From positions 1-41,236 of IMG/VR virus record IMGVR_UViG_3300005573_000154: a DNA stretch of 41,236 nt; one strand, written 5' to 3'. Of the stretch, positions 12,930-26,642 are shown one piece after another (position 1 is the first letter of the stretch; the number at the start of each line of letters is the position of its first letter). Under the pieces are notes generated by a model. The model was not told where the DNA came from. It was given only the letters and a program-made list of their open reading frames with translations, and searched no databases. Made by a program: the position numbers and the translations under genes.

Positions 12930-12984
12930 TTTCTCGTGTTTATGGGGAGAAATTTAAATATAGCGCCATGAAAAACTACTAGGC

Positions 12985-13506: not shown

Positions 13507-13512
13507 TATGTG

Positions 13513-13995
13513 TTAGCTGACTTCGTATGCACGGTTTACGGCTTTTACTGATCCCCATGCGCCGATGATCAGGCCTATTACCACAAGCCATAGACCCAGT
13601 AGTAGTTTGCCGGTGTCGAAGAATGTTAGCACCTGTGTTGTTACTATGGGTGATTCCCACAGTTCATATGCTGGGATTGTTATGATCCGCTCTATCTCCG
13701 GGACGTAGTGTTTGCTTGGGGAGCTTAGGAGCGAATATTTGTATCCGGTGGTTGCTTGGACATAATGATATGACACGGCTGAGCCTATGACGCATAGGCC
13801 AGCAATTATTAGCACTATTGCGATCAGCCCATGTGGCTTGGTGATGCATTTCAGTATCTTGCCGATGTCCTTGAACACCACGTGCCATCTTGTCTCTCCC
13901 TTGCTCACCTTGTGCATGAATCCGCCGAAGGCTAGGCCTAACACTATTGCTAGCACCCATACGAATATTGTTACTAGCAGGCCTATGCTCAGCAT
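13513..13995 (-). CDS. Membrane protein (3 TM)
   Basis: Three hydrophobic segments. Confidence 0.75.
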   Translation of the reverse strand: MLSIGLLVTIFVWVLAIVLGLAFGGFMHKVSKGETRWHVVFKDIGKILKCITKPHGLIAIVLIIAGLCVIGSAVSYHYVQATTGYKYSLLSSPSKHYVPEIERIITIPAYELWESPIVTTQVLTFFDTGKLLLGLWLVVIGLIIGAWGSVKAVNRAYEVS

Positions 13996-14049
13996 TTTTC
14001 CCTGACCTTCGATAGGGGGTGGGTGGATCTGGCTAATAAATCTTACCTA

Positions 14050-14796
14050 TCACGGGTTCCACCTAACTTTTAAGAGGTCTTCCAGATGCTTGTATTTGCA
14101 GACTATGAAGTATTCATCGCTCCCGGCAAATAGTAGCCCAACCAGTTGATCGTTCTCGCTTGGCTGGTCTCCCTGCATCAGGAAGACCGGGCTTCCGCTG
14201 TCGCCTCCCTGTGATTGGCCTTTTACCACTATTTGATCCGTGAATACCACGTATTCGTCGTTATACCAGACTTTTACGGTTGCATTGTCATTTACTATTA
14301 CGCCTTCGGTGTATCCCGTAGTTCTCCCGCATTTCCATACCTTGCGGCCAACCACGCCATCCCCGGGGTGGGTTCCCTTTGGAAGTATGATTGATCCATC
14401 CTCCATGTAAACCCCTTTCGCTATGCTCCTATCATTGGATGATGGCTGGAATGTGGCCACAGCCGCATCTATGAGCCTGTATTCCTCTGAGCACCATTTT
14501 CTCAGTAGTTGGCCGAATATCATGCATATGTATGCCTTGAGTGTTGATGGCATTACTGGAACGTATCTCTTTAGTATTCCAACCCTATCATGCGGGTCTT
14601 TGCCCCCGTCATATGGGCCAGGCTGGACTATTGCCGTTTTTCCAGGGTCTCCTCGGAAGACGTGCCAGTTGCTTACCAGCACCTCCGTGTTGTCGGTTAT
14701 GTCTTGGAAGACGCCGGATAAAGTCCCGGCGGTAGTTTTTGTTGAGCCAATGCTGACTCCCCCCGCCAACACGCTTACCCGGCCCTTCCTGTCCAT
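14050..14796 (-). CDS. Chymotrypsin-like serine protease, catalytic domain
   Basis: GTL, SNWHV (His), IDAAVA (Asp), GRTTG and GGDSGSPV (Ser) motifs. Confidence 0.9.
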   Translation of the reverse strand: MDRKGRVSVLAGGVSIGSTKTTAGTLSGVFQDITDNTEVLVSNWHVFRGDPGKTAIVQPGPYDGGKDPHDRVGILKRYVPVMPSTLKAYICMIFGQLLRKWCSEEYRLIDAAVATFQPSSNDRSIAKGVYMEDGSIILPKGTHPGDGVVGRKVWKCGRTTGYTEGVIVNDNATVKVWYNDEYVVFTDQIVVKGQSQGGDSGSPVFLMQGDQPSENDQLVGLLFAGSDEYFIVCKYKHLEDLLKVRWNP

Positions 14797-14806
14797 CCCA
14801 ACCCCC

Positions 14807-15019
14807 CTAAAGGGCTTTGAATCTCCCGGTAACGATGACCTCTATGGAGTATCCCGATATTTCAAATTTCCTGAACAGGGTTGCGTGCTCCTCGTCATCC
14901 ACGTATAACACTATCTTGTTGCCATTCACCGAGTATCCGGATACCCCCTTCTCCTTCATGAAGGTATCCAATATTTTCTTGAGCTTTTTATCAATTTTCT
15001 GTTGGGCCATCACATCCAC
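14807..15019 (-). CDS. Probable stand-alone protease pro-domain
   Basis: KGVSGYSV...IVLYV...IEVIVTGRFKAL resembles the N-terminal pro-region of this protease type; lies directly upstream of the protease. Confidence 0.6.
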   Translation of the reverse strand: MDVMAQQKIDKKLKKILDTFMKEKGVSGYSVNGNKIVLYVDDEEHATLFRKFEISGYSIEVIVTGRFKAL

Positions 15020-15096
15020 CCACCCATAAACTTTAGCATATGACTTGCTTATATGTGTTATGTTAAAAAGAAAAAAGATTATGAGGGTTTACGGGC

Positions 15097-15456
15097 CTAT
15101 TCTTCCTTCATGCCGTCCATGATGAAGTTCGTTATCGCCAGCCTGATGTATTCGGATCTGTTCCTGATTCCTTTCTTTTGCATGTCCATCTTCATTAGCG
15201 CTAGCAATCCTTTTGGGATCTTTAGGCTGACGAATACCATGTTCGTGTCATCGTCATCGAATGCGAACTTTTTGACCGGGTTGTTGTCATTGGATTTTCC
15301 GCCATCCAAGATTGATAGCAACTTCATGTGTTCTTTCAAGCCTCTCTGGATTATGAATCGCAGGGCGGTATTGCGGTATCGGTAGAGCTTCATCCGCACC
15401 ATTTTATCAACTATTTGGACTATCGGCTCTGGGAGGTGTAGTGTTACTATTTGCAT
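15097..15456 (-). CDS. Tandem ribbon-helix-helix (CopG/MetJ-like) regulator
   Basis: Two RHH units (IVTLHLPEPIVQIVDKMV...YRNTALR; VSLKIPKGLLALM...NRSEYIRLAI). TAATG overlap with the upstream gene. Confidence 0.85.
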   Translation of the reverse strand: MQIVTLHLPEPIVQIVDKMVRMKLYRYRNTALRFIIQRGLKEHMKLLSILDGGKSNDNNPVKKFAFDDDDTNMVFVSLKIPKGLLALMKMDMQKKGIRNRSEYIRLAITNFIMDGMKEE

Positions 15457-15656
15457 TACTCCTTCACCTCCTCGACGCTCACACGTATAGTCCATCCTAT
15501 GACTTGGTCGCCGTAGCAGTCATTGCTCCAGAATGTCTCGTGCATTCCCTTGATCATGTCTAATGCTTCTTGAATTGTGTCACATTTCTTTATCCTGACG
15601 CTTCCATCCTCGCCGTCCAAGAATACGTCAAACTTCAATACCTTGATCTCGCCCAT
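15456..15656 (-). CDS. Small hypothetical protein
   Basis: Start at MGEIKV; stop overlaps the RHH start codon. Confidence 0.6.
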   Translation of the reverse strand: MGEIKVLKFDVFLDGEDGSVRIKKCDTIQEALDMIKGMHETFWSNDCYGDQVIGWTIRVSVEEVKE

Positions 15657-15801
15657 AGTCCCACGTGATTGTGATGCATCAAGTGTGATATATAGATGTC
15701 TTCCGGGTATTTGACATGGTATTAGCATGGTGTATTACACGTGTATGTGTTATGCGCTATGTTTATATGGTGTTTGGGTTAATTATGGATTGTGAGGGGA
15801 T

Positions 15802-15987
15802 ATGGCTCGGGTTAAGCTGGTGCATGTAAGGATTGAGGAGGATGTGTATCGCAAGATATGGGCTATTGTGGCGGATAGGTATCTGACGCATAGCCGCAAC
15901 TTGTCAGCTATTGTGAATGAGGCTTTGAAGGAGTATATTCGAAAATATGAGAGTAAAGGCGAGAAGAGGCGAAAGAGGAGGACATAA
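15802..15987 (+). CDS. RHH DNA-binding protein
   Basis: VHVRIEEDVYRKI...LSAIVNEALKEYI. Confidence 0.85.
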   Translation: MARVKLVHVRIEEDVYRKIWAIVADRYLTHSRNLSAIVNEALKEYIRKYESKGEKRRKRRT

Positions 15988-16044
15988 TATACATAAAGTT
16001 TTTAAGGTGCTTATGTGTATAATTATCTGTGAGGTGAGGGGTGA

Positions 16045-16452
16045 ATGGAAAACGAGTTCCTGAAACTATGGTCTGAGCTGGAGGAAATCGCCGACAGGGC
16101 TAGGCGTGAGGCTAGGGGCGTCGCCATCAAGGTATGCAACGTGATCAAGGAGAGGTATTGGGATCGCATCAAGGCTGTGGCCGAGAAGTATGGCCTTGAG
16201 CCGAAGCTTGGCATAGAGATCAATGGTAGTGATCCAATTAGCTATGTGCCGGTGCTGTATTTGATTTCCGAGGAGGTGCTGGCGCCGGAGCTGGTCGAGA
16301 ACCTTAAGGAGAATATCCATAGGGAGCTAGGGGCGTGGATCAGCGATGCAAGGCTACATGTGGTGTTGCTGACAAGGGATGCCAAGCGTTTCCTGAACCT
16401 GGAGCTGATCAAGAATAATGAAAAGAAGGGGGGTGAGGGTGATGGAAGCTGA
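16045..16452 (+). CDS. Hypothetical protein overlapping the tas-like gene start
   Basis: GAGGTGA RBS; promoter-like TTTTTAAGGTGCTTATG upstream; 3' end overlaps the ATG at 16442. Confidence 0.75.
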   Translation: MENEFLKLWSELEEIADRARREARGVAIKVCNVIKERYWDRIKAVAEKYGLEPKLGIEINGSDPISYVPVLYLISEEVLAPELVENLKENIHRELGAWISDARLHVVLLTRDAKRFLNLELIKNNEKKGGEGDGS

Positions 16453-17326
16453 GGCTGGAGGGATCCTAGTCTTCGATGACTGGAATGAACTGTGGAGGTT
16501 CATCGAGTCCCGGAAAGAATATGTTGCCATTGATAGGGCGAAGACTAAAGGGAATAAGACGGCGTATTTGGCTAGGCTGACGAACGACATATGTAGGCTT
16601 CCGGAGATCTTTAAGGGCAGTATGGCGCATCATTATAGCTTGGAAGGGTTTGCGAAGCTTGCCTTGATGCTGAGGAGGCAGAAGCAGAGCTTGGACGCCA
16701 TACGGAAAGAGTATGCTTGGCAGGATTGGGCTGTCGATGCTTTAAACCAGATTATTAAGCAACGTGAAGGGCTGATTGACGAGATATACGAGCATGTCGC
16801 TGTTCACCCGGTAGTCCAATGGGTTAAGCGGGTAAAAGGGCTTGGAAAGCATGATGCAATACTATTCTTGGGCTTTATTGATCCGCATATTGCGACCTCG
16901 GCGGGGAAGGCTTACAAGTATTGGTGCCTCGCAGGCCCCGAATCGAGGCTAAAGTCTGGTAGGAAAGCTGAGGGCAGGCCTATCCTTAGAGGCGAGGGGT
17001 TCTTCATGGCAAGCAGGATCTGGATGCGAGGCGATGAATATTACAAGCCGCTAGCTGAAGCAAAAAAGGCATATTATTTGGACAAGCTACCGCAAGATGA
17101 GAAAGGTAGAAATGCACATGCACATATCAGGGCATTGCTTTGGCTGGCCAGACTACTTGTTGGCCATGCTTGGGAGATGCATCGCAAGTTCGAGCGGTTG
17201 CCGATTAACCCGCATGCCAACCATATTCCGCCAAAGCCCGATGAAGATGCCGTTTTCGATAACGATAAGATCCTAAATGCGATAAGGAATGGCCTAAGGC
17301 TTCCGCCCGAGGCTGTCAAGGTTTAA
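16442..17326 (+). CDS. TIGR-associated (Tas-like) RNA-guided protein: IS110/Nop-like RNA-binding domain, coiled coil and short N-terminal domain
   Basis: HPVVQWVKRVKGLG...LGFIDP...SAGKAYKYWCL...HAHIRALLWLARLLVGHAW...LP resembles the IS110 C-terminal / Nop fold. Directly upstream of a dual-repeat array. ATG 16442 follows a GGTGAGGG RBS. Confidence 0.85.
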   Translation: MEAEAGGILVFDDWNELWRFIESRKEYVAIDRAKTKGNKTAYLARLTNDICRLPEIFKGSMAHHYSLEGFAKLALMLRRQKQSLDAIRKEYAWQDWAVDALNQIIKQREGLIDEIYEHVAVHPVVQWVKRVKGLGKHDAILFLGFIDPHIATSAGKAYKYWCLAGPESRLKSGRKAEGRPILRGEGFFMASRIWMRGDEYYKPLAEAKKAYYLDKLPQDEKGRNAHAHIRALLWLARLLVGHAWEMHRKFERLPINPHANHIPPKPDEDAVFDNDKILNAIRNGLRLPPEAVKV

Positions 17327-17330
17327 ATTT
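17321..17330 (+). promoter_or_regulatory. Putative TATA box for the guide array
   Basis: AAGGTTTAAATT overlaps the tas stop codon, centred about 26 nt upstream of G17352 in the first repeat. It resembles the other viral AAGGTTTATA promoters. Confidence 0.55.
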
Positions 17331-17350
17331 TCCACCTCTTTTTCTTTTTT

Positions 17351-18310
17351 TGCGAGCTGGAAAACTTAGTGAGCTGTATGATGTAGCGAGCTACTCTTAA
17401 CAGTGAGCTAGATAGATGAGCGAGCTTAGGAAGAGAGTGAGCTGGATTAGGAAGCGAGCTTGAGAATTAAGGGAGCTTAATGCCAGAGCGAGCTTCTTCT
17501 AAAAGTGAGCTGGAACACATAGCGAGCTGGAAAGAAAAGTGAGCTACGCACGAAAGCGAGCTGGACTGTGAAGTGAGCTAAGTCTTTGGGCGAGCTTAAA
17601 ATCGGAGTGAGCTACGGGTTCCAGCGAGCATACCCCTGAAGTGAGCAACCTATCTGAGCGAGCTGATTTTTTAAGTGAGCTATGAGGCATAGCGAGCTAA
17701 ATTGTCCAGTGAGCTGAAGAGAAGAGCGAGCTGGTGGGTGAAGTGAGCTACAATATTTAGCGAGCTTTTTCTGAAAGTGAGCTGGAACACGGAACGAGCT
17801 ACAAGACGGAGTGAACTGCATTGTGTAGCGAGCTAGGATGATGAGTGAGCTGTTCATTGAAGCGAGCTGAGGAATAAAGTGAGCTATCTACTCAAGCGAG
17901 CCACGATAATGAGTGAGCAACCCTCGGGAGCGAGCTGAATGGCTTAGTGAGCAAATAGGTATAGCGAGCTGAGACGATAAGTGAGCTGGGACATAAAGCG
18001 AGCTGAAATAAAAAGTGAGCTAAATAAAAAAGCGAGCTATGAAATCTAGTGAGCTGTGGATTGAAGCGAGCTGTGAGCTTGAGGGAGCTACCAATACAAG
18101 CGAGCTGGAATCGTGAGGAAGCTAGGGGGAATAGCGAGCTTAAAATCTGAGTGAGCTGGAGTCTATAGCGAGCTTTGAATAAAAGTGAGCTACCTCAAGA
18201 AGCGAGCTATATGAAAGAGTGAGCTGGAGGAATGAGCGAGCTGAAATAGAAAGTGAGCTACGCAATAAAGCGAGCTTGAGAAGAAAGTGAGCTATCCCGT
18301 CAAGCGAGCT
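17351..18310 (+). ncRNA. TIGR-type tandem interspaced guide RNA array: 28 units of 34 nt (AGCGAGCT-N9-AGTGAGCT-N9)
   Basis: 57 8-nt repeats at an exact 17-nt period from 17351 to 18303, alternating AGCGAGCT / AGTGAGCT with a few variants; 56 distinct 9-nt spacers; adjacent to the Nop/IS110-like gene. Confidence 0.92.
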
Positions 18311-18331
18311 GAATGGGAAAAAATATGGGGG

Positions 18332-18637
18332 TTAGATGTCTATGAACTGGTATTTGCCTTTGACCCTCATGAATGCTTTTGGCTTGACCTTGTATTCTCC
18401 TTCAAGGGCTTTGAGGTCTTTGAATCTTTCCGCTAGCCTGCTTTGATCCGCTGGGGCGTCTTCCTGTTTTACCTGTATCAGCCATATCTCCTTGTTTTCG
18501 GGGAATATTGCTATGATGTCTGCTGGGCCTAGGCTTCGGCTACTTCTTATGACAAGTGCCCCCATCTCCCTTAGCTTTTCACGGCAGAAGTGTTCCACCT
18601 GGTAGCCCTTCTTGTATGGCGTGGTTTTCTGGCTCAT
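18332..18637 (-). CDS. hjc: Archaeal Holliday junction resolvase (PD-(D/E)XK)
   Basis: KGYQVE...G..VIRS..S.GPADIIA...LIQVK; a typical rudiviral gene. Confidence 0.88.
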   Translation of the reverse strand: MSQKTTPYKKGYQVEHFCREKLREMGALVIRSSRSLGPADIIAIFPENKEIWLIQVKQEDAPADQSRLAERFKDLKALEGEYKVKPKAFMRVKGKYQFIDI

Positions 18638-18643
18638 GGGCGG

Positions 18644-19075
18644 CTATCGCCCCAGCATCTGGACGTATTTTGCACGTGCTACTCCTAGGGCGCCTAGGAC
18701 TCGTAGGATCACGAAGTTGGCCAGCTTCCTGTTTTTCTCGATGTAGCTCTTGGGGATGTAGAATGCCTGTTCCTCGAGGTCAATGTATATTGGGATTCGG
18801 TCTCTTACCTTCTTCCTCTTTCCGTCGGGCGTGATTATGTAGCTCTTCCTCGTGATCACGTAGTATTCTTTTCCTTCTACTTTTACCTTCTTGAGCATGA
18901 AGTTTTTGTCGGGGAACCTTGTCTGCAGACTCTTGACATATTGCTGTATCCGATCTAGATCTACTCTTGCATTGGGTATCCTTACAACTTCGAAGAGAGC
19001 ATCGTATCTACTGTGATTGGACTTTCCCATTACCGTGATGTCGGCGTATTCATCGAAGATCCGCACCAGCCGCAT
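18644..19075 (-). CDS. Basic hypothetical protein
   Basis: GGGGTGA RBS; co-oriented with hjc. Confidence 0.8.
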   Translation of the reverse strand: MRLVRIFDEYADITVMGKSNHSRYDALFEVVRIPNARVDLDRIQQYVKSLQTRFPDKNFMLKKVKVEGKEYYVITRKSYIITPDGKRKKVRDRIPIYIDLEEQAFYIPKSYIEKNRKLANFVILRVLGALGVARAKYVQMLGR

Positions 19076-19093
19076 CCATCATCACCCCCGGGG

Positions 19094-19282
19094 CTATCTT
19101 ACCTTATGCCTCTCCACGTATTCCTTTAACGCCTCATTTATGACCAGCCAGATAGTCCTTACTGGTGTTCCATACTTGAAGGCGGCGATCAGGGCTAGCT
19201 CCCGGTAAACATCACTGTCTATCATGACGTGTTTCCTGACGTATTTTGCCTTGTCTTTTTGGGCAACTTTCTGAGCCGGCAT
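19094..19282 (-). CDS. RHH DNA-binding protein (similar to 15802-15987)
   Basis: KHVMIDSDVYREL...INEALKEYV. Confidence 0.85.
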   Translation of the reverse strand: MPAQKVAQKDKAKYVRKHVMIDSDVYRELALIAAFKYGTPVRTIWLVINEALKEYVERHKVR

Positions 19283-19620
19283 GCCTCAATCACCCTATGG
19301 GTATTATGGTTATTGTGCTATTTAAGCAATACGCCAATAAGTGATGGAAGTAATACCCATATGGGCGCCATAATTGTTCAAGGGTCTTGAGGTATGATCA
19401 AGTCCCTATACTTTAGCAGTGCCTCCACACCATACCACCTTATCATCTGATTCACGAATAGCCAAACATCCCTCATGGGAAGCCTTACCCTACCCAACCC
19501 ATCAACCACCTCATGGGATTTATGGTTATTGTGTTATTTAATCATTACCTGTATCGGTGCTAGAACTACACGTGTAATCCCACGCATGAAACAAAAAAAT
19601 AAAGAGGGGGGTTTTAGTTG

Positions 19621-20046
19621 CTAGAGGACTTCGTATAGTTCGGGGGTTATCATCTTGATTAGCTTGTTGGCTAGGAAGGCGTCAAACCATTTCTTGACCG
19701 TCCTGTCATCGGGGCCTCTGACGTTTGCTATCGCCATCAGGATATGCTTGCGGGGGATTTGCTGGCCGGGTATTATCGCTATGTATCCAAGATGCTCCTC
19801 TAGGAACTTCCTAACCTCTGCGAAGACCCTTCCAACCTTGGGCTGGGGGTTGGCCGCATTCAAAAGTTTGTGCGCTTCTTGCGTGTGCTGGGCGATCCAT
19901 ACCTTCATTGCCTGCTCGATCTCATGGCTCAAAACCCCGTGAAATCTGCCGTATTTCTGGAAAGCTACCCGCCTAAACTCCTCTAACACCTTCTTATCCA
20001 CATAGACATATATACCGGCTTTATTGGGAGGAAGCCTCGGCATCAT
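19621..20046 (-). CDS. RHH domain fused to a probable winged-helix domain
   Basis: IYVYVDKKVLEEFRR...LSHEIEQAM; C-terminal DDRTVKKWFDAFLANKLIK. Confidence 0.75.
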   Translation of the reverse strand: MMPRLPPNKAGIYVYVDKKVLEEFRRVAFQKYGRFHGVLSHEIEQAMKVWIAQHTQEAHKLLNAANPQPKVGRVFAEVRKFLEEHLGYIAIIPGQQIPRKHILMAIANVRGPDDRTVKKWFDAFLANKLIKMITPELYEVL

Positions 20047-20468
20047 TGTTCACCTCGGATACTAGTAAACTTTCACGGATACTAGTGCTATATGATACAT
20101 ATATATATACATTTCTATCAAGAAAGTTAGAGTAGAGTTCAAAAAAATTAGAGATAAATAAGGCTTATGCAAAAACCTTATTATCAGAAGGGGTGGCGAA
20201 GCCTTATGGGGCGGGGGCACCCACGCACGCAAAATGCACACATTTTTTTGTGCTGTAACGTAGCCTCAAGCCTCTTATAACTACACGTGTAGTTACTCCC
20301 TATCTTCTTCAACGGCCCTAGCGAAGCTGAAGCCATCCACAGCTTTTGGCCTTAACCTGAACGTTAGCATCAGCCACACGAGGAACCTGACCTTAAGCCT
20401 CTCCAGCCTCTCCCCTATCCGCATCACGCATCAGGCATAATAACGACCAATATATTTCTATTAACGAT

Positions 20469-20645
20469 ATGAGCAGGGCTGAGCTTATCGCATACATCGT
20501 CCTCATGGCCATGTTCCTGATCACGGTAATCATGTTGCTGGTCTTCTTGGGCCAGATGATAAACCTGCTAAACAAGTGCCTAGACCAGCCATGCACATGC
20601 TTCCAATGGCCCTCAAATATACTGTGCTACAATATTACAAGGTGA
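20469..20645 (+). CDS. Small membrane protein with Cys-rich tail (58 aa, not in ORF track)
   Basis: Translates to MSRAELIAYIVLMAMFLITVIMLLVFLGQMINLLNKCLDQPCTCFQWPSNILCYNITR. Its stop lies in the GGTGA RBS of the next gene. Confidence 0.6.
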   Translation: MSRAELIAYIVLMAMFLITVIMLLVFLGQMINLLNKCLDQPCTCFQWPSNILCYNITR

Positions 20646-20652
20646 ATCACAC

Positions 20653-21294
20653 GTGAATATCAAGGAGCTGATAGACAGGTCAATGACAAACAGGGCTAAC
20701 GAGAGGCCCCTTGAATACGCCTTCGCATGGTCTTGCCTAGCGCCGCTCCTACTAGTCCCAGAGAAGCATAGGAGGAGGATCAGGATTCTGGATGTTGGAG
20801 GGGCTGACAGCCTGCTATCTAAAACCCTAGCCAACCTGGGCTTCGACACAACCGTAATAGACATAAACCCCGTAGATCACGGCAAGGCGAAATACATATG
20901 CGCCAACATCCTCACATACGACTTTCCCGAGCAGTCATTCGACATCATAATAGCCATCTCAACGATAGAACACATTGGCCTACAATGCTACGGCCAAGAC
21001 ATACAAGACCCGGACGGAGACATCAAGACGATGGAGAAGATCCACAGGTGGCTGAGAAACGGCGGCCTAGCAATAATAACCCTACCATACGGAAAACCAC
21101 ACCACCCGCCAACCTTCGAACGAACCTATAACAAGGACACCCTCAAAGACAGGATACTCAGACACGGATGGAACATCCTAAGGCTGGAATACACGTGTAA
21201 TAACGGGACATGGAGACAATGCCTAGAACAAGAAGCAAACACACATGATGCCGCAGTCCTAATGCTCCTCCAGAAACACAATGCTTATAAATGA
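20653..21294 (+). CDS. Class I SAM-dependent methyltransferase
   Basis: ILDVGGA, VIDIN, FDIIIAISTIEH and LRNGG motifs. Confidence 0.9.
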   Translation: MNIKELIDRSMTNRANERPLEYAFAWSCLAPLLLVPEKHRRRIRILDVGGADSLLSKTLANLGFDTTVIDINPVDHGKAKYICANILTYDFPEQSFDIIIAISTIEHIGLQCYGQDIQDPDGDIKTMEKIHRWLRNGGLAIITLPYGKPHHPPTFERTYNKDTLKDRILRHGWNILRLEYTCNNGTWRQCLEQEANTHDAAVLMLLQKHNAYK

Positions 21295-22154
21295 TCACGA
21301 GTAAAATGGCCATGAACACCATGAGGCGGGAAATACCAATACTGTTCTGCATAATCCTATTAGCCTTCTCGATGATCGTCCCGGCATTCGCCGCCAAGAC
21401 GATGCAAATAGAAGTTGAGACCCACAGGGAGTTCGTCAGCCCATATACGGGCGAGGTTGAGAGACACGCATCATTCTACGCATTAACGGGAGACCATATC
21501 CAATGGTGGACTGGCGGAGCAGTCTTCATCTACAACGTAAATGGAACCGAGGCCAAGGCCAAGATACAGAACTTCACCCAAAGCCTAGTAAAGCTCCTAA
21601 AGGACATAGGATTCATCATCGTAGCCGGAACGGTTAAACCAGTATATGCCAAGATAGTATATGTATATGAAGGCGTGATAGAATACGAGGGATTCTACTT
21701 CGTGGACGACAATGGCTCAATAGTGGTAGAATGGGCGGAGGGGAAGCCGCTCACAATAACAATCACGGCAAAGGCCACGATCAACGCCAGCACAGCAACA
21801 TATGCAGGCCGAGCTGACTGGGCCGAGGTAAAGGTTCCAGGAGGAAAGGCATACATAACCCCGAAGCTAGAAATACCATTACCAGACAAGCCGATACAAG
21901 TCCTAGTAATCCCACGTGAAGGATTCACCGGAATAACAACAGAGGTCAGCAACTATTACCATAACGAGACCAGAACATACATGCTCGGAGGAGGCCCAGA
22001 AGTCTTCACCATAGAGCCATCACCGGCTGGATGGACGCTCCACGACTCGCCGACATTCTGGGGCAAATACCCCGCCTTGAAAATCCTCTATGACGAAGAA
22101 GGCAGACACGTCCTCCTAATTGACTGGTTCTGGCACTCCGAAGTCCCAATATAA
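21291..22154 (+). CDS. Secreted/surface protein with signal peptide
   Basis: RRE + hydrophobic core + AFA cleavage-like site; beta-rich mature part with N-x-T/S sequons. Confidence 0.75.
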   Translation: MITSKMAMNTMRREIPILFCIILLAFSMIVPAFAAKTMQIEVETHREFVSPYTGEVERHASFYALTGDHIQWWTGGAVFIYNVNGTEAKAKIQNFTQSLVKLLKDIGFIIVAGTVKPVYAKIVYVYEGVIEYEGFYFVDDNGSIVVEWAEGKPLTITITAKATINASTATYAGRADWAEVKVPGGKAYITPKLEIPLPDKPIQVLVIPREGFTGITTEVSNYYHNETRTYMLGGGPEVFTIEPSPAGWTLHDSPTFWGKYPALKILYDEEGRHVLLIDWFWHSEVPI

Positions 22155-22184
22155 CCCTGAAACCCTCTTATTTTTTTATGTGTT

Positions 22185-22493
22185 TCAGAATAATCCTTTG
22201 CCCCTAGCCCCTGATAAGGCCCTCATCCTAAGGCCCTCGATCTTAATCGCCCTAACAAGGTCATCAACAATCAGCTCAACCCTATCCCTAATATCCTCCT
22301 CAAGCAGATCCGGCATGGTATATGATACAACAGTCCTAACCACATCCGCTAGATCACGCCTGAGGTCATCCTCACCTATCCTGCCGTGAGTATAGAGGTC
22401 TGCTAGTAGCTTTATCGTGGCCGCAACATCAACCTTAGCCCTCGGATCATCAATGCCAGCAATCAACGCCTGAACCTTAGCCATCAACACCAT
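22185..22493 (-). CDS. Helical protein, possibly the conserved small rudiviral gene near the MCP
   Basis: Size, helical pattern and divergent position upstream of the MCP recall a rudiviral core gene; unverified. Confidence 0.6.
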   Translation of the reverse strand: MVLMAKVQALIAGIDDPRAKVDVAATIKLLADLYTHGRIGEDDLRRDLADVVRTVVSYTMPDLLEEDIRDRVELIVDDLVRAIKIEGLRMRALSGARGKGLF

Positions 22494-22506
22494 GCCCCAT
22501 CACCCC

Positions 22507-22677
22507 CTAATCGAACACCTTTACCACAGCCCCGCACTCGGGGCACTGGAACCCCTCAATAACCTTAACAACCGCACTCATAAGTATATCCTCCTTCCTA
22601 ACCCCAGTCCTCTGCTCCAGCTCATTAAGCTTCTCCCAAACCCTGATCGGAACAACGATCTCAAGCTTCATGGACAT
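22507..22677 (-). CDS. Small RHH protein with CPECG motif (56 aa, not in ORF track)
   Basis: Translates to MSMKLEIVVPIRVWEKLNELEQRTGVRKEDILMSAVVKVIEGFQCPECGAVVKVFD; GGGTGA RBS. Confidence 0.7.
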   Translation of the reverse strand: MSMKLEIVVPIRVWEKLNELEQRTGVRKEDILMSAVVKVIEGFQCPECGAVVKVFD

Positions 22678-22689
22678 GCCCCATCACCC

Positions 22690-23355
22690 TTATACCTTGA
22701 CACCGCCCCGGGCTGACATAAATTTCAGGATTATATGCGCCCCAGCCCTAAGGGCCTTCGGATCAGTATTAGGCTTCCTCTCCCATATCTTAAGCTCCTC
22801 CTCAGCTATAGCCGTCCACCGGCTCACAGACTCCTTCTTAAGCCTCTGATAAAGATGCAACATGAACCTTAAGACGGTCAACCTCTTATCCCCGGTAAAG
22901 CCAAAAGCATCACAGACATAGCGGGAAAGCGTCTCAATATACGCCCTATCATACCAGAACTGCTCATAAGCCTTTTGAGCATCTTCCGATAGCTCCCTCC
23001 CCCGCTTCCTCCACCATTTCTCATACTTTAACTTAGCTCTTTCTATAATCCTCATCTCATTCTCCGCCAAAAGGATATGACTATAAATCCACCTATCCTT
23101 TATGCTCTGAAATGTAATCGGCTCATCACCAAGCTTCACGATCTCATTATAGTATAAGAAAGGCTTTCTTTCATACAATACAGTAAAAGGCAGTAGCCTT
23201 ACATCTCTATTCCCAGTTGACATCTGCTGAGACTCCTGTATCTCGTCTTGGGGATTATTTCCTTCACCAGATTGAGCATCATCTCCCTTAACGCTATTAC
23301 CATTCATCCCCTTTGCATCTTTGCTATTTTTCGCACTCTCCTTCGCCAAAGTCAT
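22690..23355 (-). CDS. Protein with disordered N-terminus and a possible C-terminal MCP-like helical domain
   Basis: KYEKW...VCDAFGFTGDKR..VLRFMLHLY...NTDPKALRA aligns by eye with the MCP (YLDSKGITGGVRALYLAFALKLW...GLDTTLL). Confidence 0.65.
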   Translation of the reverse strand: MTLAKESAKNSKDAKGMNGNSVKGDDAQSGEGNNPQDEIQESQQMSTGNRDVRLLPFTVLYERKPFLYYNEIVKLGDEPITFQSIKDRWIYSHILLAENEMRIIERAKLKYEKWWRKRGRELSEDAQKAYEQFWYDRAYIETLSRYVCDAFGFTGDKRLTVLRFMLHLYQRLKKESVSRWTAIAEEELKIWERKPNTDPKALRAGAHIILKFMSARGGVKV

Positions 23356-23489
23356 ACCTCAACACTAGAGAATATTATAGCGAAGTATATAAAGATAATG
23401 CTGGCACCCACATTGAAACCCCTGCATCGCAAGATTTAAAAGCTGGTATTACGTGCCTACACATGCAGGTAAAGGGGTGAGGTAGGGAG

Positions 23490-23867
23490 ATGCCGCTCTA
23501 CCGAGACGGCATAATGATGTTCGAGAAGTATTCGAAGAAGTATAACCCGACGGTAATCGGCACCAGGTTCACGGATGTCCAGGCCACAGCGCTAGCGAGG
23601 GCTCAGGCAGGCCTCAACAAGGTTGACACCATCAGGTCAATGGTCAGGGACTACCTAGACTCCAAGGGGATCACGGGCGGCGTCAGGGCGCTCTACCTGG
23701 CGTTCGCCCTGAAGCTGTGGGCCCACGTTGAGAGGCAGGGAAACACCGCATCCAACAAGATTGCAGACGGCCTAATCGCCTACTTCAACAAGGCCTACGG
23801 GCTTGATACTACGCTACTCACCGACATCGCCAACGCAATCATCGTGAAGCCATCGGCTACACCGTAA
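23490..23867 (+). CDS. Major capsid protein, SIRV2/Adnaviria fold
   Basis: KYSKKYNPTV, GITGGVRALYLAFALKL and GLIAYFNKAYGLDTTLL match the SIRV2 MCP pattern (NPTV...GITGPNRAIYQGFGLKV...GLKGYYISAFNANPQVL). Strong RBS and terminator. Confidence 0.9.
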   Translation: MPLYRDGIMMFEKYSKKYNPTVIGTRFTDVQATALARAQAGLNKVDTIRSMVRDYLDSKGITGGVRALYLAFALKLWAHVERQGNTASNKIADGLIAYFNKAYGLDTTLLTDIANAIIVKPSATP

Positions 23868-23918
23868 AACAGCCAACCAGCTCACATCTTTTAAATTCCC
23901 CCTTTTTCTTTTTTTCTG

Positions 23919-25007
23919 ATGAACGGGAGACCGGTAGTATATTACATCTACCCAACCACGAAATGGGTCTCCTTCAGGATAATAGCCGAGGAACATATAA
24001 GACAGATACAAAAACAGTTTTACGTCCAGAAGGTTGATGAGACGGCCCTAGCAACAATACTACCGATAGCATCAATATCAGCCAAATCAGTCATATTCCT
24101 CCACCCATACTTCTATCCGATACAGGTCTATGAGAGGAGGCTTTTTTCAAGGATCGGAAAAATAGGCAACCTCATAGGGGTAGATGTTGCGGACACGGAT
24201 CATATGACAGAGATAGCCGTAAGGCTAACGGGATACGCAACAGCCATGATAGTCCCATCAAACTTCTCAGGGAAAACATATGTAGAGTCAGGGGTAAAGA
24301 CGCCAGTCCACGTGATTCCACATGGAGTCCACGAGTCATACATTGATGCAGAGCCATCAAAGCCCAACATATTCAAGGCCCTCCACGACTACAAGGCTAT
24401 GACGAAGAAGAAGCTGATGCAGATATGGGTCTTACACAGCTCATACCGCAAGGGCGAAGACCTCGCATACAAGATCTTCAACATACTCGTTAAAGAAAGG
24501 ATGGACGTAGCCCTAGTCGTCAGAAGACCACTAAGCATAGACCTATACGACTCCCCAATAAACCCCGAAAAGCTAACGCCAAAGATAACAATAGGCAAAT
24601 CATACCTCACGGATGAGGAGATAAAGGAGCTGATGGACATATGCGACATCTTCCTCCTAGCAAGCAGGGGAGGAGGCTTCGAACACCCACCCCTACTGGG
24701 AATGGCCAGGGGTGAGATAGTCATAGCGGCCAAGGGAGGAGCATGGGAGGACTACATGCCGGAATGGGGCCTAGTCCAATCACAGAAAAGCGAAACAGTC
24801 CTGCCCGGAAACCCGATACACGACGGCAGGGGAGTAGAAATGATAGCCGACAACGCAGTAGCAAAGATCTACGAAATACTAAACAACATGGACGAATACA
24901 AGGCGAAAATCAAAGAACACGTAGAAAAACACGTAAAACCAAACTTCACATGGGATAAAATAGGCCAAAAGCTCAGAGAGCTGACAGCAAGATATTTACA
25001 CATGTAG
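23919..25007 (+). CDS. GT-B (family 4) glycosyltransferase
   Basis: IVPS, VIPHG, RKGED and SRGGGFEHPPLLGMARG motifs; adjacent to the MCP as in rudiviruses. Confidence 0.9.
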   Translation: MNGRPVVYYIYPTTKWVSFRIIAEEHIRQIQKQFYVQKVDETALATILPIASISAKSVIFLHPYFYPIQVYERRLFSRIGKIGNLIGVDVADTDHMTEIAVRLTGYATAMIVPSNFSGKTYVESGVKTPVHVIPHGVHESYIDAEPSKPNIFKALHDYKAMTKKKLMQIWVLHSSYRKGEDLAYKIFNILVKERMDVALVVRRPLSIDLYDSPINPEKLTPKITIGKSYLTDEEIKELMDICDIFLLASRGGGFEHPPLLGMARGEIVIAAKGGAWEDYMPEWGLVQSQKSETVLPGNPIHDGRGVEMIADNAVAKIYEILNNMDEYKAKIKEHVEKHVKPNFTWDKIGQKLRELTARYLHM

Positions 25008-25040
25008 GATCACCCCATTATATGGGGGAGGAGGAAAAAG

Positions 25041-26360
25041 ATGGCAACATCAGACCAGATACTCAAGAAGCAGAAATACTTTGAGAAGACGCTATCGCAG
25101 AGCGCAATCTACGCAATATACCTCAGGCACCTGGACACGGCACCCCTATTCGCAGAGAACATCTGGTTCCAGATACCGGTCTTCGACCTATCAGCGCTAG
25201 GGCTAGGCCTCCTATACAATATACTCCCAATAGAGTTCCTGCCATTCCCAATAGACTTCCAATACCAGTCGCCCACAGCTGAAGAGACGCTACAAGGCAT
25301 ATGGGCCAACTTCGTTCCAGTTGAATTCGCTAGGATGTATATCTGGATGACCGACTACCGTGAATACATCCTAGAAAACATGAAGGAGGAATATCAATTC
25401 GACATGATAATGGAGTCCCCGAAGAAGGCCGTCTATGGCAAGACGCTATACGCCAAGGGCATATATGACCCGCCAGTCCAGAGAGAATTCCTCAGGAGCA
25501 CATTCATGAGGCTAAGGTTGCTCAGGAAGCCAGACGTATCATACCGAGACATGCTTAAAGACCTAGCAGAATACCTGAGGATGGCTGGGGTCACGGATGA
25601 ACACGTGTGGAACAGGCTGATGCTGATATACGCCGCCCAGACACAGGCATTTGTCCTCGGGCTAAGCCCACTGGGGGTGGGCAGGCTATCCAGAAGGGAT
25701 GGAGACATGGCGGTTGTAACGATAATGGATGCACGTGGAAACATAGTTGACGTAAGGTTCAGGACTCTAGACCACAACCAAATAGGATTCATACTCGGCC
25801 TAACGCCCCTAGGATACGGCTACCTCCTCCCCCGTGACGAAAGCATATACAAGATGCCCGATGGAAAGAAGAACCCGCAGATCATAGACATAATCAAGAA
25901 GAAGATCAGGGGAATGAGGGATAGATACGTGCTAACAACCTTCGCCTACACCAACTACCACCCCGCCCAAGAGATGTCAGACTACCACAAGAGCCTCAAA
26001 ACAGCGCAATACGACACTCTCCAAACATATAGATCCATGATAGAGGACTGGGTTGCACGCCAAATACCGCCCGATGAGGCAAACCCGGCCAGAATAAGAC
26101 ACTACCAGAACGCAGTCCTCCAGCTCATATCATGGCGGGCGAAGCGCCATAGGTGGGGCTGGGAGGGCTGGAAGGCCATGACCGAGGACGAATTCAGGGA
26201 CTGGTGGCTCGGATACTGGAAACAGCAAGGCTTAAATCAGTCTGTGCTAAGGAATTTATACGAGGGAATAGAGCCTTGGCTGAGGAAGCTCCGAGAAGGA
26301 AAGCTAGAATTAGGAGAGAGGGTGAAGAGGCTGAGGCGGACGTTAGCCCGGCTGATGTAG
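25041..26360 (+). CDS. Probable minor structural protein
   Basis: In the structural operon; internal repeat (FVLGLSPLG / FILGLTPLG); C-terminal helical region weakly MCP-like. Confidence 0.7.
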   Translation: MATSDQILKKQKYFEKTLSQSAIYAIYLRHLDTAPLFAENIWFQIPVFDLSALGLGLLYNILPIEFLPFPIDFQYQSPTAEETLQGIWANFVPVEFARMYIWMTDYREYILENMKEEYQFDMIMESPKKAVYGKTLYAKGIYDPPVQREFLRSTFMRLRLLRKPDVSYRDMLKDLAEYLRMAGVTDEHVWNRLMLIYAAQTQAFVLGLSPLGVGRLSRRDGDMAVVTIMDARGNIVDVRFRTLDHNQIGFILGLTPLGYGYLLPRDESIYKMPDGKKNPQIIDIIKKKIRGMRDRYVLTTFAYTNYHPAQEMSDYHKSLKTAQYDTLQTYRSMIEDWVARQIPPDEANPARIRHYQNAVLQLISWRAKRHRWGWEGWKAMTEDEFRDWWLGYWKQQGLNQSVLRNLYEGIEPWLRKLREGKLELGERVKRLRRTLARLM

Positions 26361-26392
26361 CGCCAGTAAGGCCTCAATCAATAATACAGACA

Positions 26393-26629: not shown

Positions 26630-26642
26630 ACGGTGGGGTGAG

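What the first reader, a model, noticed from the sequence alone, without database searches (positions are those of the whole stretch)
19300..20650. Strong G+T versus A+C strand skew flips near the genome midpoint, independent of gene direction
Seen by eye: the plus strand is G/T-rich in the left half and A/C-rich in the right half, although most genes in both halves are on the plus strand (GTT/GAT/GAG codons left, ATA/GAC/ACA right). The switch region has a divergent intergenic stretch with a (TA)n run, a duplicated CGGATACTAGT and the 18-bp palindrome TAACTACACGTGTAGTTA (20278-20295). Inference: replication starts at both termini and converges centrally, or this is a central origin/terminus. 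No polymerase, primase, helicase or HUH Rep is recognisable.
Basis: partly seen in the sequence, partly recalled or inferred. Interest (0 to 1): 0.6.

Follow-up and report, generated by a model that had tools for sequence, protein, structure and literature searches.

The report
Two-arm strand skew in archaeal virus
A complete 41-kb linear genome of a new rod-shaped archaeal virus carries a very strong mutational fingerprint that flips sign near its centre regardless of gene direction. This is best read as DNA replication running inward from both ends, although no replication gene can be recognised.

Summary
The window is a complete linear virus genome with a perfect 392-bp inverted terminal repeat. 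At four-fold degenerate sites, read on the + strand, G+T minus A+C is +0.21/+0.31 for + and - genes left of about 19.9 kb and -0.45/-0.34 right of it. Arm effect is about 0.66, gene-strand effect about 0.10. The change is a step no more than about 2 kb wide at 19.85-20.4 kb (midpoint 20.6 kb), with no gradient inside the arms.

The virus is a distant relative of Rudiviridae/Lipothrixviridae, sharing the capsid protein, a glycosyltransferase and the large fibre protein. No polymerase, primase, helicase or Rep was found.

The polarity, with the 5' arm of each strand keto-rich, is that expected for forks or strand displacement moving inward from the termini. I found the same polarity in the bottle-shaped viruses ABV and ABV3, which encode protein-primed polymerases. 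A central origin predicts the opposite sign.

Two caveats apply. A complete 28.5-kb relative flips at 24% of its length and ABV3 at 68%, so the midpoint is not a rule. I classify this as a new member of a known kind, with an unexplained sharp switch.

The parts
1..392 (.). Left inverted terminal repeat. It is keto-rich on the + strand, contains 9-nt TTTTGTGTG-type repeats at 48-111, and holds TACACGTGTA at 1-10 and a variant at 147.
   Evidence: Perfect 392-nt reverse-complement identity of the two ends. IMG/VR classes the record as ITR-ended. Tandem repeats, motif.
393..19890 (.). Left arm, with the + strand G+T-rich. Four-fold keto skew is +0.21 for + genes and +0.31 for - genes. There is no gradient along the arm.
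   Evidence: (slope -0.0006 per kb).
19831..20841 (.). Support interval for the skew switch on four-fold sites. The all-site change point is 19896. The best 1-kb ramp is centred at about 20400, and the genome midpoint is 20618.
20047..20468 (.). Divergent intergenic region between the leftward operon and the rightward genes. It holds the TATA-like (TA)n run at 20096-20112, two CGGATACTAGT copies at 20056 and 20076, and the 18-bp palindrome at 20278-20295.
   Evidence: Sequence, repeats, ORF map. The 11-mers lie between the TA run and the start codon of ORF 19621-20046 (-), an operator-like position. That reading is inference.
20278..20295 (.). The 18-bp palindrome, one of 11 exact copies of the dispersed TACACGTGTA motif. 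A sister copy with the same AAC flank lies at 19564-19576.
19286..19568 (-). Two copies of a 67-nt promoter-like repeat (19286-19352 and 19502-19568, 75% identical). Each carries a TTAAATA box on the - strand.
   Evidence: and the sequence. The promoter role is inferred.
19621..20046 (-). 141-aa protein with an RHH-like N-terminus. It is the first gene of the leftward operon. Its homologue is on the capsid-gene strand in relative L002.
   Evidence: It has no Pfam or NCBIfam family. The RHH reading rests on resemblance to the paralogous small RHH proteins.
19094..19282 (-). 62-aa RHH-type small regulator, a paralogue of ORF 15802-15987.
   Evidence: Weak VapB/RHH Pfam matches. Both ORFs map to the same place in relatives.
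18644..19075 (-). 143-aa protein conserved in nearly all relatives and always next to the nuclease. Its function is unknown.
   Evidence: The model has pLDDT 91, but the best structural match is only Z 6.7.
18332..18637 (-). 101-aa PD-(D/E)xK nuclease resembling archaeal Holliday-junction resolvase Hjc. It is conserved in most relatives.
   Evidence: Pfam Mrr_cat E 0.001. Invariant E15, D40, E50, Q55 and K57. The best structural matches are Hjc entries, led by 1gef_E at Z 6.2, rmsd 2.9 over 72 aa, 22% identity. Weak VRR-NUC hit 4qbn.
20469..20645 (+). 58-aa hydrophobic ORF, probably the first gene of the right arm. It is a more plausible gene than the overlapping - strand ORF 20393-20596.
   Evidence: This is a judgement from the sequence.
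20653..21294 (+). SAM-dependent methyltransferase, the first large right-arm gene. Its four-fold keto skew is -0.44.
   Evidence: Pfam Methyltransf_23 at 2e-11, skew.
22690..23355 (-). Candidate second capsid-protein paralogue, encoded divergently from the main capsid gene.
   Evidence: hhalign E 5e-4 with probability 31%. Stronger matches of the capsid profile to the equivalent ORFs of relatives, for example 4.9e-16 in G002.
23490..23867 (+). Major capsid protein of the rudivirus/lipothrixvirus type.
   Evidence: Pfam PF12193 at 1.3e-18. It is 29-33% identical to all Rudiviridae capsid proteins.
20842..40844 (.). Right arm, with the + strand A+C-rich. Four-fold keto skew is -0.45 for + genes and -0.34 for - genes, and four-fold AT skew is about +0.6. 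There is no gradient. The last 2 kb (39033-40888) is an exception, with skew near zero or positive.
40845..41236 (.). Right inverted terminal repeat.

Best explanation
The flip is a replication-linked mutational asymmetry in a complete linear genome with inverted terminal repeats, from a new filamentous archaeal virus of the Ligamenvirales type.

DNA synthesis enters from both termini and moves inward. In each arm, the strand whose 5' end lies at that terminus is the displaced or lagging-template strand. That is the + strand on the left and the - strand on the right. This strand accumulates C-to-T and A-to-G changes and becomes G+T-rich.

The two replication domains meet in a narrow zone at about 19.9-20.4 kb, next to a divergent promoter region.

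What is shown:
- The asymmetry is positional and independent of gene strand.
- It is step-like and recurs in relatives.
- It has the same polarity as in archaeal viruses that carry protein-primed polymerases.

What is inferred:
- That replication is the cause.
- That initiation is at the termini.
- That deamination of exposed single strands at high temperature is the chemistry.

What fixes the meeting point is not explained.
For: 1. The record is a whole genome with a perfect 392-bp ITR.
2. At four-fold sites the arm effect is about 0.66 and the gene-strand effect about 0.10. Both the GC and the AT components flip at the same boundary.
3. The left arms of the window and of the complete relative G1 share no detectable genes. 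Both are nonetheless keto-rich on both gene strands. The right arm of G1 contains a 7.3-kb block of - strand genes that still has -0.33. The bias is therefore imposed in place, not inherited with the genes.
4. Polarity calibrators computed here with the same script. ABV (ITR, protein-primed polymerase) flips at 0.51 of its length with +0.23/-0.16, independent of gene strand. ABV3 gives +0.11/-0.17. SIFV gives +0.23/-0.14.
5. Any initiation at the switch, coupled or by nick and displacement, would make the + strand keto-rich on the right. That is the opposite of what is seen (reasoning in the report, established polarity of skew).
6. Precedents in the literature. SIRV2 initiates at both termini by strand displacement, with some strand-coupled replication (PMC5062984). 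Borgs are linear ITR elements whose cumulative GC skew indicates initiation at the ends and two replichores (PMC9605863).
7. An Hjc-like nuclease is conserved next to the switch. This fits resolution of replicative concatemers as in rudiviruses.
Against: - No replication protein of any kind is recognisable. Nothing independent of composition supports initiation at the ends.
- Time-as-single-strand models of end-initiated displacement predict a ramp, as SIFV shows. Here the data give a sharp step.
- Symmetric firing predicts a midpoint switch, yet G1 switches at 0.23-0.24 and ABV3 at 0.68.
- Under this model most right-arm genes are transcribed head-on to the fork.
- Sulfolobales rudiviruses, for which terminal initiation is documented, show little skew. 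So does phi29.
- The block abutting the switch is inverted only in the window. The exact boundary may therefore be set by a rearrangement.
- Read-coverage evidence could not be obtained.
Confidence: 0.62

Rival explanations
1. The switch is a site-specific replication terminus or fork barrier. A bound protein complex at the divergent control region stops one or both inward forks. The position of the flip is therefore set by a cis element and not by geometry. This refines the best explanation and is not fully exclusive of it.
For: - The step is sharp, at most 2 kb in the window and at most 1 kb in G1.
- The switch is off-centre in G1 (0.23-0.24) and ABV3 (0.68). The arm carrying the structural module keeps a similar length: 21.3 vs 21.7 kb, and 11.7 vs 9.2 kb.
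- In both the window and G1 the switch lies in a divergent intergenic region at the 5' side of the operon holding the 143-aa protein and the Hjc-like nuclease.
- Clusters of the TACAYRTGTA motif sit at the termini and around the switch in the window and in L003.
Against: - No sequence element is shared between the switch regions of the window and G1. G1 has no TACAYRTGTA at all.
- In L002, L031, L042 and G2 the A+C-rich arm extends well upstream of that operon, so the distance from operon to switch varies.
- In ABV the switch lies inside a run of co-directional genes.
- To my knowledge no fork-trap system is known in archaeal viruses.
Confidence: 0.18
2. The pattern is historical, not current. 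The boundary marks a rearrangement, such as an inversion or arm replacement, or an older midpoint that has since been displaced by gain or loss of DNA in one arm. Skew relaxes slowly, so the present position of the flip says little about where forks meet today.
For: - The block at 18.3-20.05 kb is on the opposite strand in all 15 relatives examined, and its breakpoint coincides with the switch.
- The right arms have nearly equal lengths in a 41-kb and a 28.5-kb genome.
- In ABV3, the octants between the present midpoint and the switch have lower positive skew than most of the rest of the left arm.
- The right-terminal 2 kb of the window lacks the arm's skew, as newly acquired DNA would.
Against: - History cannot create the skew, only move its boundary.
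- The left arms of the window and G1 are unrelated in gene content, yet they have the same sign on both gene strands.
- An inversion with one end at the switch is skew-neutral, so it neither supports nor dates the event.
Confidence: 0.1
3. The switch is an internal origin from which replication diverges, and the mutational polarity in this virus-host system is the reverse of the canonical one.
For: - The switch lies in an AT-rich divergent intergenic region with repeats and palindromes, which looks like an origin.
- With diverging forks, most right-arm genes and the genes immediately to the left would be co-directional with replication.
- From my own memory, not checked here: an internal D-loop start has been reported for the lipothrixvirus AFV1 (Pina et al. 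2014). The paper was not found in the library.
Against: - The polarity is opposite to that at every well-characterised origin. It matches the ABV and ABV3 calibrators, where a protein-primed polymerase implies terminal initiation.
- The repeats are explained as promoter and operator elements and as a dispersed motif.
- Most left-arm genes (971-13506, + strand) would be head-on to the fork.
Confidence: 0.06
4. The asymmetry is not replicative. It would come from transcription-coupled mutation, from codon or mRNA selection differing between early and late modules, or from a chimeric assembly of two viruses.
For: - The switch coincides with a boundary between gene modules, regulatory/accessory on the left and structural on the right.
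- The genome comes from a metagenome.
Against: - Genes on the minority strand of each arm carry the arm's skew, not their coding strand's.
- Non-coding DNA has the same sign.
- Transcription-coupled deamination would make the right-arm coding strand keto-rich, which is the opposite of what is seen.
- The genome has a perfect ITR and an independent metagenome contig with the same sequence.
- The same architecture occurs in the complete relative G1 and in several fragments.
Confidence: 0.03

Closest known systems
Borg extrachromosomal elements of Methanoperedens (PMC9605863)
   Same: Linear archaeal replicons with inverted terminal repeats. Their cumulative GC skew is read as initiation at the ends, with two replichores that can be unequal in length.
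   Different: In Borgs each replichore carries nearly all its genes on one strand, so replication and transcription effects are confounded. Here about 85% of the genes in both arms point the same way, and the skew still flips. Borgs are up to about 1 Mb, against 41 kb here. The skew here is far stronger at synonymous sites.
Acidianus bottle-shaped viruses ABV and ABV3 (Ampullaviridae; EF432053, KP282674)
   Same: Hyperthermophile-infecting linear ITR genomes. With the same script they show a strand-independent flip of the same polarity, step-like in ABV, at 0.51 and 0.68 of the genome length.
   Different: They encode a protein-primed family B polymerase, and the window encodes none that can be recognised. 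Their skew is about half as strong. The virion type is unrelated. I found no published description of their skew in the library searched.
Rudivirus SIRV2 replication (PMC5062984) and Rudiviridae in general
   Same: They share the capsid protein family, a glycosyltransferase, the large fibre protein, linear ITR genomes and an Hjc-type nuclease. SIRV2 initiates at both termini by strand displacement.
   Different: The window has no detectable Rep, SSB gp17, gp18 or Cas4-like gp19 homologue. The Sulfolobales rudiviruses SIRV2, ARV1, SBRV1 and SRV show only weak skew that largely follows the coding strand. The window lineage probably has a second capsid paralogue, as lipothrixviruses do.
Lipothrixvirus SIFV (AF440571)
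   Same: Same order and a genome of about 41 kb. The strand-independent keto skew has the same polarity.
   Different: In SIFV a genome-wide linear ramp fits better than a step by 17 lnL, as expected if exposure time scales with distance from the ends. The window shows a step.
Adenovirus-type and mitochondrial strand-displacement asymmetry (Grigoriev 1999, Virus Res 60:1, cited from my own knowledge and via PMC12999951; PMC3269015 for mitochondria)
   Same: Composition asymmetry is attributed to deamination of the displaced single strand, and linear genomes are replicated from both ends.
   Different: Those systems have known replication machinery, and mitochondria show graded skew. phi29, the bacterial protein-primed model, shows no such pattern at four-fold sites in my test.

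Membership tests
Replichore-type strand asymmetry of a linear replicon that initiates at its termini | One internal sign switch of GC, AT and keto skew | tested here: met
   Change point at 19852-19896 with a gain of 273 lnL, and a single switch in the genome.
Replichore-type strand asymmetry of a linear replicon that initiates at its termini | Asymmetry persists at synonymous sites and is independent of gene orientation | tested here: met
   Four-fold sites: left arm + genes +0.21, left arm - genes +0.31, right arm + genes -0.45, right arm - genes -0.34.
Replichore-type strand asymmetry of a linear replicon that initiates at its termini | Polarity: the strand with its 5' end at a terminus is G+T-rich in that arm (cumulative maximum at the switch) | tested here: met
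   The sign is the same in the ABV and ABV3 calibrators, which carry protein-primed polymerases.
Replichore-type strand asymmetry of a linear replicon that initiates at its termini | Direct evidence of terminal initiation (marker frequency, replication intermediates, terminal protein or nicking Rep) | not testable with these tools
No initiator gene was recognised.
Replichore-type strand asymmetry of a linear replicon that initiates at its termini | The same architecture occurs in relatives | tested here: met
   G1 gives +0.17/-0.42, strand-independent, with the switch at 0.23-0.24. L003 flips at about 1.8-2.6 kb. Many fragments are uniformly A+C-rich on the capsid-gene strand, and some relatives have no skew.
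Ligamenvirales (Rudiviridae / Lipothrixviridae) | Major capsid protein of the SIRV2/AFV fold family | tested here: met
   PF12193 at 1.3e-18. It is 29-33% identical to all rudiviral capsid proteins.
Ligamenvirales (Rudiviridae / Lipothrixviridae) | Linear dsDNA genome with inverted terminal repeats | tested here: met
   392-bp perfect ITR.
Ligamenvirales (Rudiviridae / Lipothrixviridae) | Rudiviral replication module (Rep ORF119, SSB gp17, gp18, Cas4-like gp19) | tested here: not met
   phmmer against all ORFs of SIRV2, ARV1, SBRV1 and SRV finds only the capsid protein, the glycosyltransferase, the ORF1070-like protein and an ORF59b-like protein. The family scans are negative.
Ligamenvirales (Rudiviridae / Lipothrixviridae) | Holliday-junction resolvase of Hjc type | tested here: inconclusive
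   The 101-aa protein matches Mrr_cat at E 0.001 and has conserved E/D/E/QxK residues. Its best structural match is Hjc entry 1gef_E at Z 6.2, and all matches are below Z 8.
Protein-primed replication (phi29 / adenovirus / Ampullaviridae type) | Family B protein-primed DNA polymerase encoded by the element | tested here: not met
   No polymerase family was matched by any ORF of 60 aa or more in Pfam, NCBIfam or PHROGs.
Protein-primed replication (phi29 / adenovirus / Ampullaviridae type) | Terminal protein covalently linked to the 5' ends | not testable with these tools
   This needs virion DNA.
Site-specific replication fork trap (Tus-Ter / RTP type) | Conserved cis site at the skew switch, bound by a dedicated protein | tested here: not met
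   No word is shared between the switch regions of the window and G1. The TACAYRTGTA motif is dispersed and absent from G1. Protein binding was not tested.

The most novel reading that the evidence does not exclude
An archaeal filamentous virus with no recognisable replication genes divides its linear genome into two replication domains that end at a programmed internal site. The evidence would be the sharp switch of at most 1-2 kb, off-centre in relatives and lying next to a conserved operon for a 143-aa protein and an Hjc-like nuclease. That would make it a viral replication terminus or fork barrier, or a resolution site, of a kind not described in archaea or their viruses. The dispersed TACAYRTGTA palindrome, found at the extreme termini and clustered at the switch, could be the binding site of the factor involved.
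Probability: 0.15. Interest if true: 0.75.

Novelty: new member of a known kind. Interest (0 to 1): 0.5.

Why it matters
How hyperthermophilic archaeal filamentous viruses copy their genomes is mostly unknown, and this lineage offers no recognisable replication protein to start from.

Here the composition of the genome itself gives the direction of synthesis in each arm. The signal is unusually clean for three reasons:
- Genes in both arms point the same way.
- The effect at synonymous sites is mitochondrion-like in size.
- It even shifts amino-acid use, with Thr at 2.8% on the left and 7.2% on the right.

The same test applied to ABV, ABV3, SIFV, PSV and the Sulfolobales rudiviruses gave step, ramp, uniform and near-absent patterns respectively. 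A simple four-fold-site scan could therefore sort uncultured linear viruses by replication mode.

The sharp, sometimes off-centre switch raises a concrete and testable question: what fixes the point where the two domains meet?

Tried and rejected
**Searches that found nothing or little**
- Nucleotide and tblastn searches of the switch region, the left end and the 439-aa protein against the phage collection gave no hit. Only the capsid protein reaches known viruses.
- Single-protein locus searches gave few or no relatives. An alignment-based search was needed.
- The atlas search for the 438-aa left-end protein gave nothing usable.
- The literature searches found no description of skew in lipothrixviruses or rudiviruses. 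They also did not find the AFV1 replication paper.

**Gradient model.** Regression of per-gene four-fold skew on position gives slopes near zero in both arms. Ramp models are rejected.

**The palindrome as a unique origin or terminus element.** Rejected. It is one of 11 exact copies and 17 degenerate copies. It is present in relatives without skew (L024, L025) and absent from strongly skewed ones (G1, L028, L031).

**A shared motif between the termini and the switch in G1.** None was found.

**The 143-aa conserved protein as a Rep-like initiator.** The model is confident (pLDDT 91), but Foldseek E-values are all 5e-3 or worse and the best VIA-align Z is 6.7 to unrelated proteins. No conserved HUH motif was seen. 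Its function is left open.

**phi29 as a polarity calibrator.** It shows no usable positional signal.

**Ends of the metagenome contig.** The window's own metagenome contig is 82 nt longer at each end. The ends were not fetched, because more than half of that record was already held.

**Pairwise substitution test.** An unpolarised comparison with the 97%-identical fragment L017 was considered and dropped. At compositional equilibrium it cannot show direction.

Full report
**What the window is**

The 41,236-base window is an entire IMG/VR virus record. Its two ends are perfect reverse complements over 392 bases, so it is a complete or nearly complete linear genome with inverted terminal repeats. 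An independent metagenome contig carries the same sequence with 82 more bases at each end. I could not read those ends, because more than half of that record was already held.

ORF 23490-23867 is a major capsid protein of the rudivirus/lipothrixvirus family:
- It matches Pfam PF12193 at 1.3e-18.
- It is 29-33% identical to every rudiviral capsid protein in the phage collection.

By phmmer against all ORFs of SIRV2, ARV1, SBRV1 and SRV, only four proteins are shared:
- the capsid protein;
- a glycosyltransferase, with E-values near 1e-48;
- the very large structural protein, 2088 aa here and ORF1070-like;
- one small protein.

A weakly similar second capsid paralogue lies divergently upstream.

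Other recognisable genes are:
- a GNAT acetyltransferase domain;
- a class-II glutamine amidotransferase;
- a Nal1-like protease;
- a SAM methyltransferase;
- several wHTH and RHH regulators.

No polymerase, primase, helicase, Rep, SSB or Cas4-like nuclease was matched by any ORF of 60 aa or more in Pfam, NCBIfam or PHROGs. The virus is therefore a distant, unclassified member of the Ligamenvirales-type filamentous viruses with an unknown replication module.

**The observation**

It holds in full.

- The + strand composition of the two halves differs strongly, and cumulative keto skew peaks at position 19892. The figures are in the observation check.
- Purine excess is the same in both halves, so the usual coding-strand purine loading is separable from the component that flips.

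The key test uses four-fold degenerate sites, expressed on the + strand and split by arm and gene strand:

| Arm | Gene strand | Keto skew | Sites |
|---|---|---|---|
| Left | + | +0.21 | 1366 |
| Left | - | +0.31 | 570 |
| Right | + | -0.45 | 2471 |
| Right | - | -0.34 | 436 |

- The arm accounts for a shift of about 0.66 and the gene strand for about 0.10.
- Both the GC and the AT components change sign at the same place.
- Non-coding DNA has the same signs.
- The pressure even reaches protein composition: Thr is 2.8% on the left and 7.2% on the right, and Cys is 1.7% against 0.5%.

**Position and shape**

- The maximum-likelihood change point on four-fold sites is 19852-19855, with support 19831-20841.
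- On all sites it is 19896.
- With a 1-kb ramp the best centre is about 20400.
- The geometric midpoint is 20618.
- Ramps wider than about 2.5 kb lose more than 2 lnL, and a genome-wide linear ramp loses 88 lnL.
- Within each arm the per-gene skew has no trend.

One exception is the last 2 kb before the right repeat (39033-40888), where the skew is near zero or positive.

**The switch region itself**

It is a divergent control region.

To the left, on the - strand, runs an operon of four genes:
- a 141-aa protein with an RHH-like N-terminus (19621-20046);
- a 62-aa RHH protein (19094-19282);
- a conserved 143-aa protein (18644-19075);
- a 101-aa PD-(D/E)xK nuclease (18332-18637).

The nuclease's best structural matches are archaeal Hjc resolvases. 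The top hit is 1gef_E at Z 6.2, rmsd 2.9 over 72 residues and 22% identity. All matches are below Z 8, so this is suggestive only.

To the right, on the + strand, lie a 58-aa hydrophobic ORF and the methyltransferase.

- The (TA)n run and the two CGGATACTAGT copies sit between a TATA-like element and the start codon of the 141-aa gene. That is the position of an operator. This reading is inference.
- Two 67-nt promoter-like repeats lie between the first two genes of the operon.
- The 18-bp palindrome is real, but its core TACACGTGTA occurs 11 times exactly. With one mismatch it occurs 18 times, against 0.5 expected, and none of 100 shuffles reached 18.
- Copies of the core sit at positions 1-10 and 41227-41236, mostly in intergenic DNA.
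- The degenerate form TACAYRTGTA is similarly enriched in many relatives, including ones with no skew. It is absent from the strongly skewed G1, L028 and L031.

The motif is therefore a lineage-specific dispersed site, most likely for a regulator, and it does not determine the flip.

**Relatives**

Alignment-based searches with a conserved 439-aa protein recovered 4 viral and 29 metagenomic loci.

One of them, G1, is a complete 28,549-bp genome with a 123-bp perfect repeat. It has the same architecture:
- Four-fold keto skew is +0.12/+0.25 (+ and - genes) in the left arm and -0.48/-0.33 in the right arm.
- The right arm includes a 7.3-kb block of - strand genes (n=1063 sites).
- The step is at most 1 kb wide.
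- The switch is at 6.6-6.8 kb, which is 0.23-0.24 of the length.

The left arms of G1 and the window share no detectable genes, so the bias is imposed in place and not inherited. The right arms are almost equal in length, 21.7 and 21.3 kb.

Fragment L003 flips at about 1.8-2.6 kb. Several fragments are uniformly A+C-rich on the capsid-gene strand for up to 10 kb upstream of the anchor. Other relatives of similar protein identity show no skew at all.

In all 15 relatives examined, the block of RHH gene, 143-aa protein and nuclease lies on the capsid-gene strand in the A+C-rich arm. Only the window has it inverted, abutting the switch from the other side. An inversion with one end at the switch keeps each gene's orientation relative to the inferred fork, and keeps its skew. 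It is therefore neutral for composition and cannot be dated. It does mean that the exact boundary in the window coincides with a rearrangement breakpoint.

**Which way does synthesis run?**

The strand exposed as single-stranded DNA, whether as lagging-strand template or as displaced strand, gains T and G through deamination of C and A. This is the accepted basis of skew in bacteria, mitochondria and eukaryotic replication domains (established knowledge; PMC3269015 for mitochondria).

- For a fork moving rightward, the exposed strand is the + strand.
- The window has + keto-rich on the left and - keto-rich on the right, so synthesis moves inward from both ends.
- I worked through initiation at the switch, by diverging coupled forks or by a nick on either strand of a hairpin-ended molecule. 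Every version predicts the opposite sign.

As an empirical check, I ran the same script on known linear viruses:

| Virus | Switch (fraction of length) | Four-fold keto skew, left/right | Pattern |
|---|---|---|---|
| ABV (ITR, protein-primed polymerase) | 0.51 | +0.23/-0.16 | Strand-independent step |
| ABV3 (ITR, protein-primed polymerase) | 0.68 | +0.11/-0.17 | Left arm strand-independent; too few - strand sites on the right |
| SIFV | 0.35 | +0.23/-0.14 | Genome-wide ramp fits better than a step by 17 lnL |
| PSV | no switch | +0.25 uniformly | Uniform on both gene strands |
| Four Sulfolobales rudiviruses | not resolved | weak | Largely follows the coding strand |
| phi29 | not resolved | weak | No usable positional signal |

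The protein-primed viruses must start at their ends, so the sign seen in ABV and ABV3 supports the reading for the window.

Published precedents are the terminal initiation and strand displacement of SIRV2 (PMC5062984) and the end-initiated replichores inferred from GC skew in Borgs (PMC9605863). In Borgs the skew is confounded with coding strand.

**What remains unexplained**

- End-initiated strand displacement, with exposure time proportional to distance, predicts a ramp like that of SIFV. It does not predict the step seen in the window, G1 and ABV.
- A step would follow from strand-coupled forks. It would also follow if single-strand lifetime were long compared with fork transit and both ends fired together. 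That scenario predicts a midpoint switch. The window (0.48-0.495) and ABV (0.51) fit it, but G1 (0.23-0.24) and ABV3 (0.68) do not.
- In both virus families the arm with the structural module keeps its length while the other arm varies. That fits either a fixed site or a fossil of an older midpoint.
- Under the inward model, most right-arm genes are transcribed head-on to the fork.
- Skew strength ranges from none to extreme among relatives. I cannot say whether the cause is the host, the temperature or the replication mode.

**Limits**

- All gene models are my own greedy ORF calls of 60 aa or more. The large site counts make the arm contrasts robust to a few false ORFs.
- The Grigoriev 1999 adenovirus analysis and the AFV1 replication study are cited from memory, not from text I could read.

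**Verdict**

- The feature is real, strong and positional.
- It is best explained as replication-linked mutational asymmetry with synthesis entering from both termini.
- The central-origin alternative is disfavoured.
- The local palindrome and repeats are regulatory or dispersed elements, not a replication site.
- It is a new member of a known kind of genome architecture, and an unusually clean one.
- The open question is what fixes the sharp switch.

Noticed in passing
window 16418-18310: ORF 16418-17326 (+, 302 aa) weakly matches the NCBIfam model for the TIGR-Tas RNA-guided endonuclease (NF052498, E 2e-10, 41 bits, below the cutoff of 100) and a PHROG 'transposase'. Directly downstream, 17402-18310 holds arrays with a 17-nt period, made of a conserved AG[CT]GAGCT plus about 9 variable bases. 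This is a candidate virus-borne TIGR-Tas-like or TnpB-like guide-RNA locus.
   Followed up: partly
window 1, 147, 3081, 6081, 7401, 8554, 15736, 19567, 20282, 21190, 24997, 27030, 27205, 33741, 37138, 41081, 41227: A dispersed 10-bp palindrome TACAYRTGTA occurs 17 times (0.12 expected). Copies are mostly intergenic or within about 100 nt upstream of gene starts, sit at both extreme termini, and cluster around the switch. It is enriched 50- to 100-fold in many relatives and absent from others. It is probably the site of a virus or host regulator.
   Followed up: partly
L046 (ABV), L049 (ABV3), L048 (SIFV), L047 (PSV): Known hyperthermophile viruses carry strand-independent keto skew at four-fold sites. 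ABV has a step at 0.51 of its length. ABV3 has a switch at 0.68. SIFV has a genome-wide ramp. PSV is uniformly +0.25. I found no description of this in the library searched.
   Followed up: partly
window 39033-40888: The last 2 kb before the right ITR lacks the right arm's A+C excess, with four-fold keto skew of -0.01, +0.08 and +0.22. It may be recently acquired DNA. ORF 39463-40275 matches phrog_22373 at 8e-12.
   Followed up: no
window 27419-28254: About 17 tandem copies of a 45-nt (15-aa) unit lie inside the 2088-aa ORF1070-like structural protein.
   Followed up: no
window 3699-6052: Two adjacent metabolic-looking genes: a 522-aa protein with a C-terminal GNAT acetyltransferase domain, and a 260-aa class-II glutamine amidotransferase that resembles the N-terminal domain of GlmS at 1.4e-25.
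   Followed up: no
window 14050-14796 (-): A Nal1-like serine protease domain (PF25819 at 2.3e-8; a PHROG 'protease' family scored 2.3e-27 in the all-ORF scan, ORF not stated). It has a 55%-identical homologue in relative L044 on the capsid-gene strand.
   Followed up: no
L016 (Ga0207433_10002105): The window's own metagenome contig is 41,400 bp, which is 82 nt longer at each end than the IMG/VR record. The symmetric extra sequence could be a read-through of terminal hairpins. It was not inspected.
   Followed up: no
window, + strand genes of both arms: The mutational pressure reaches protein composition. Left/right percentages are Thr 2.8/7.2, Cys 1.7/0.5, Arg 8.0/5.4, Glu 8.0/5.8 and Pro 3.7/5.2.
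   Followed up: partly
window 48-111 and 381-505: The ITR carries about 7 copies of a 9-nt TTTTGTGTG-type unit. About 5 copies of a 24-nt unit straddle the inner ITR boundary on the left side only.
   Followed up: no
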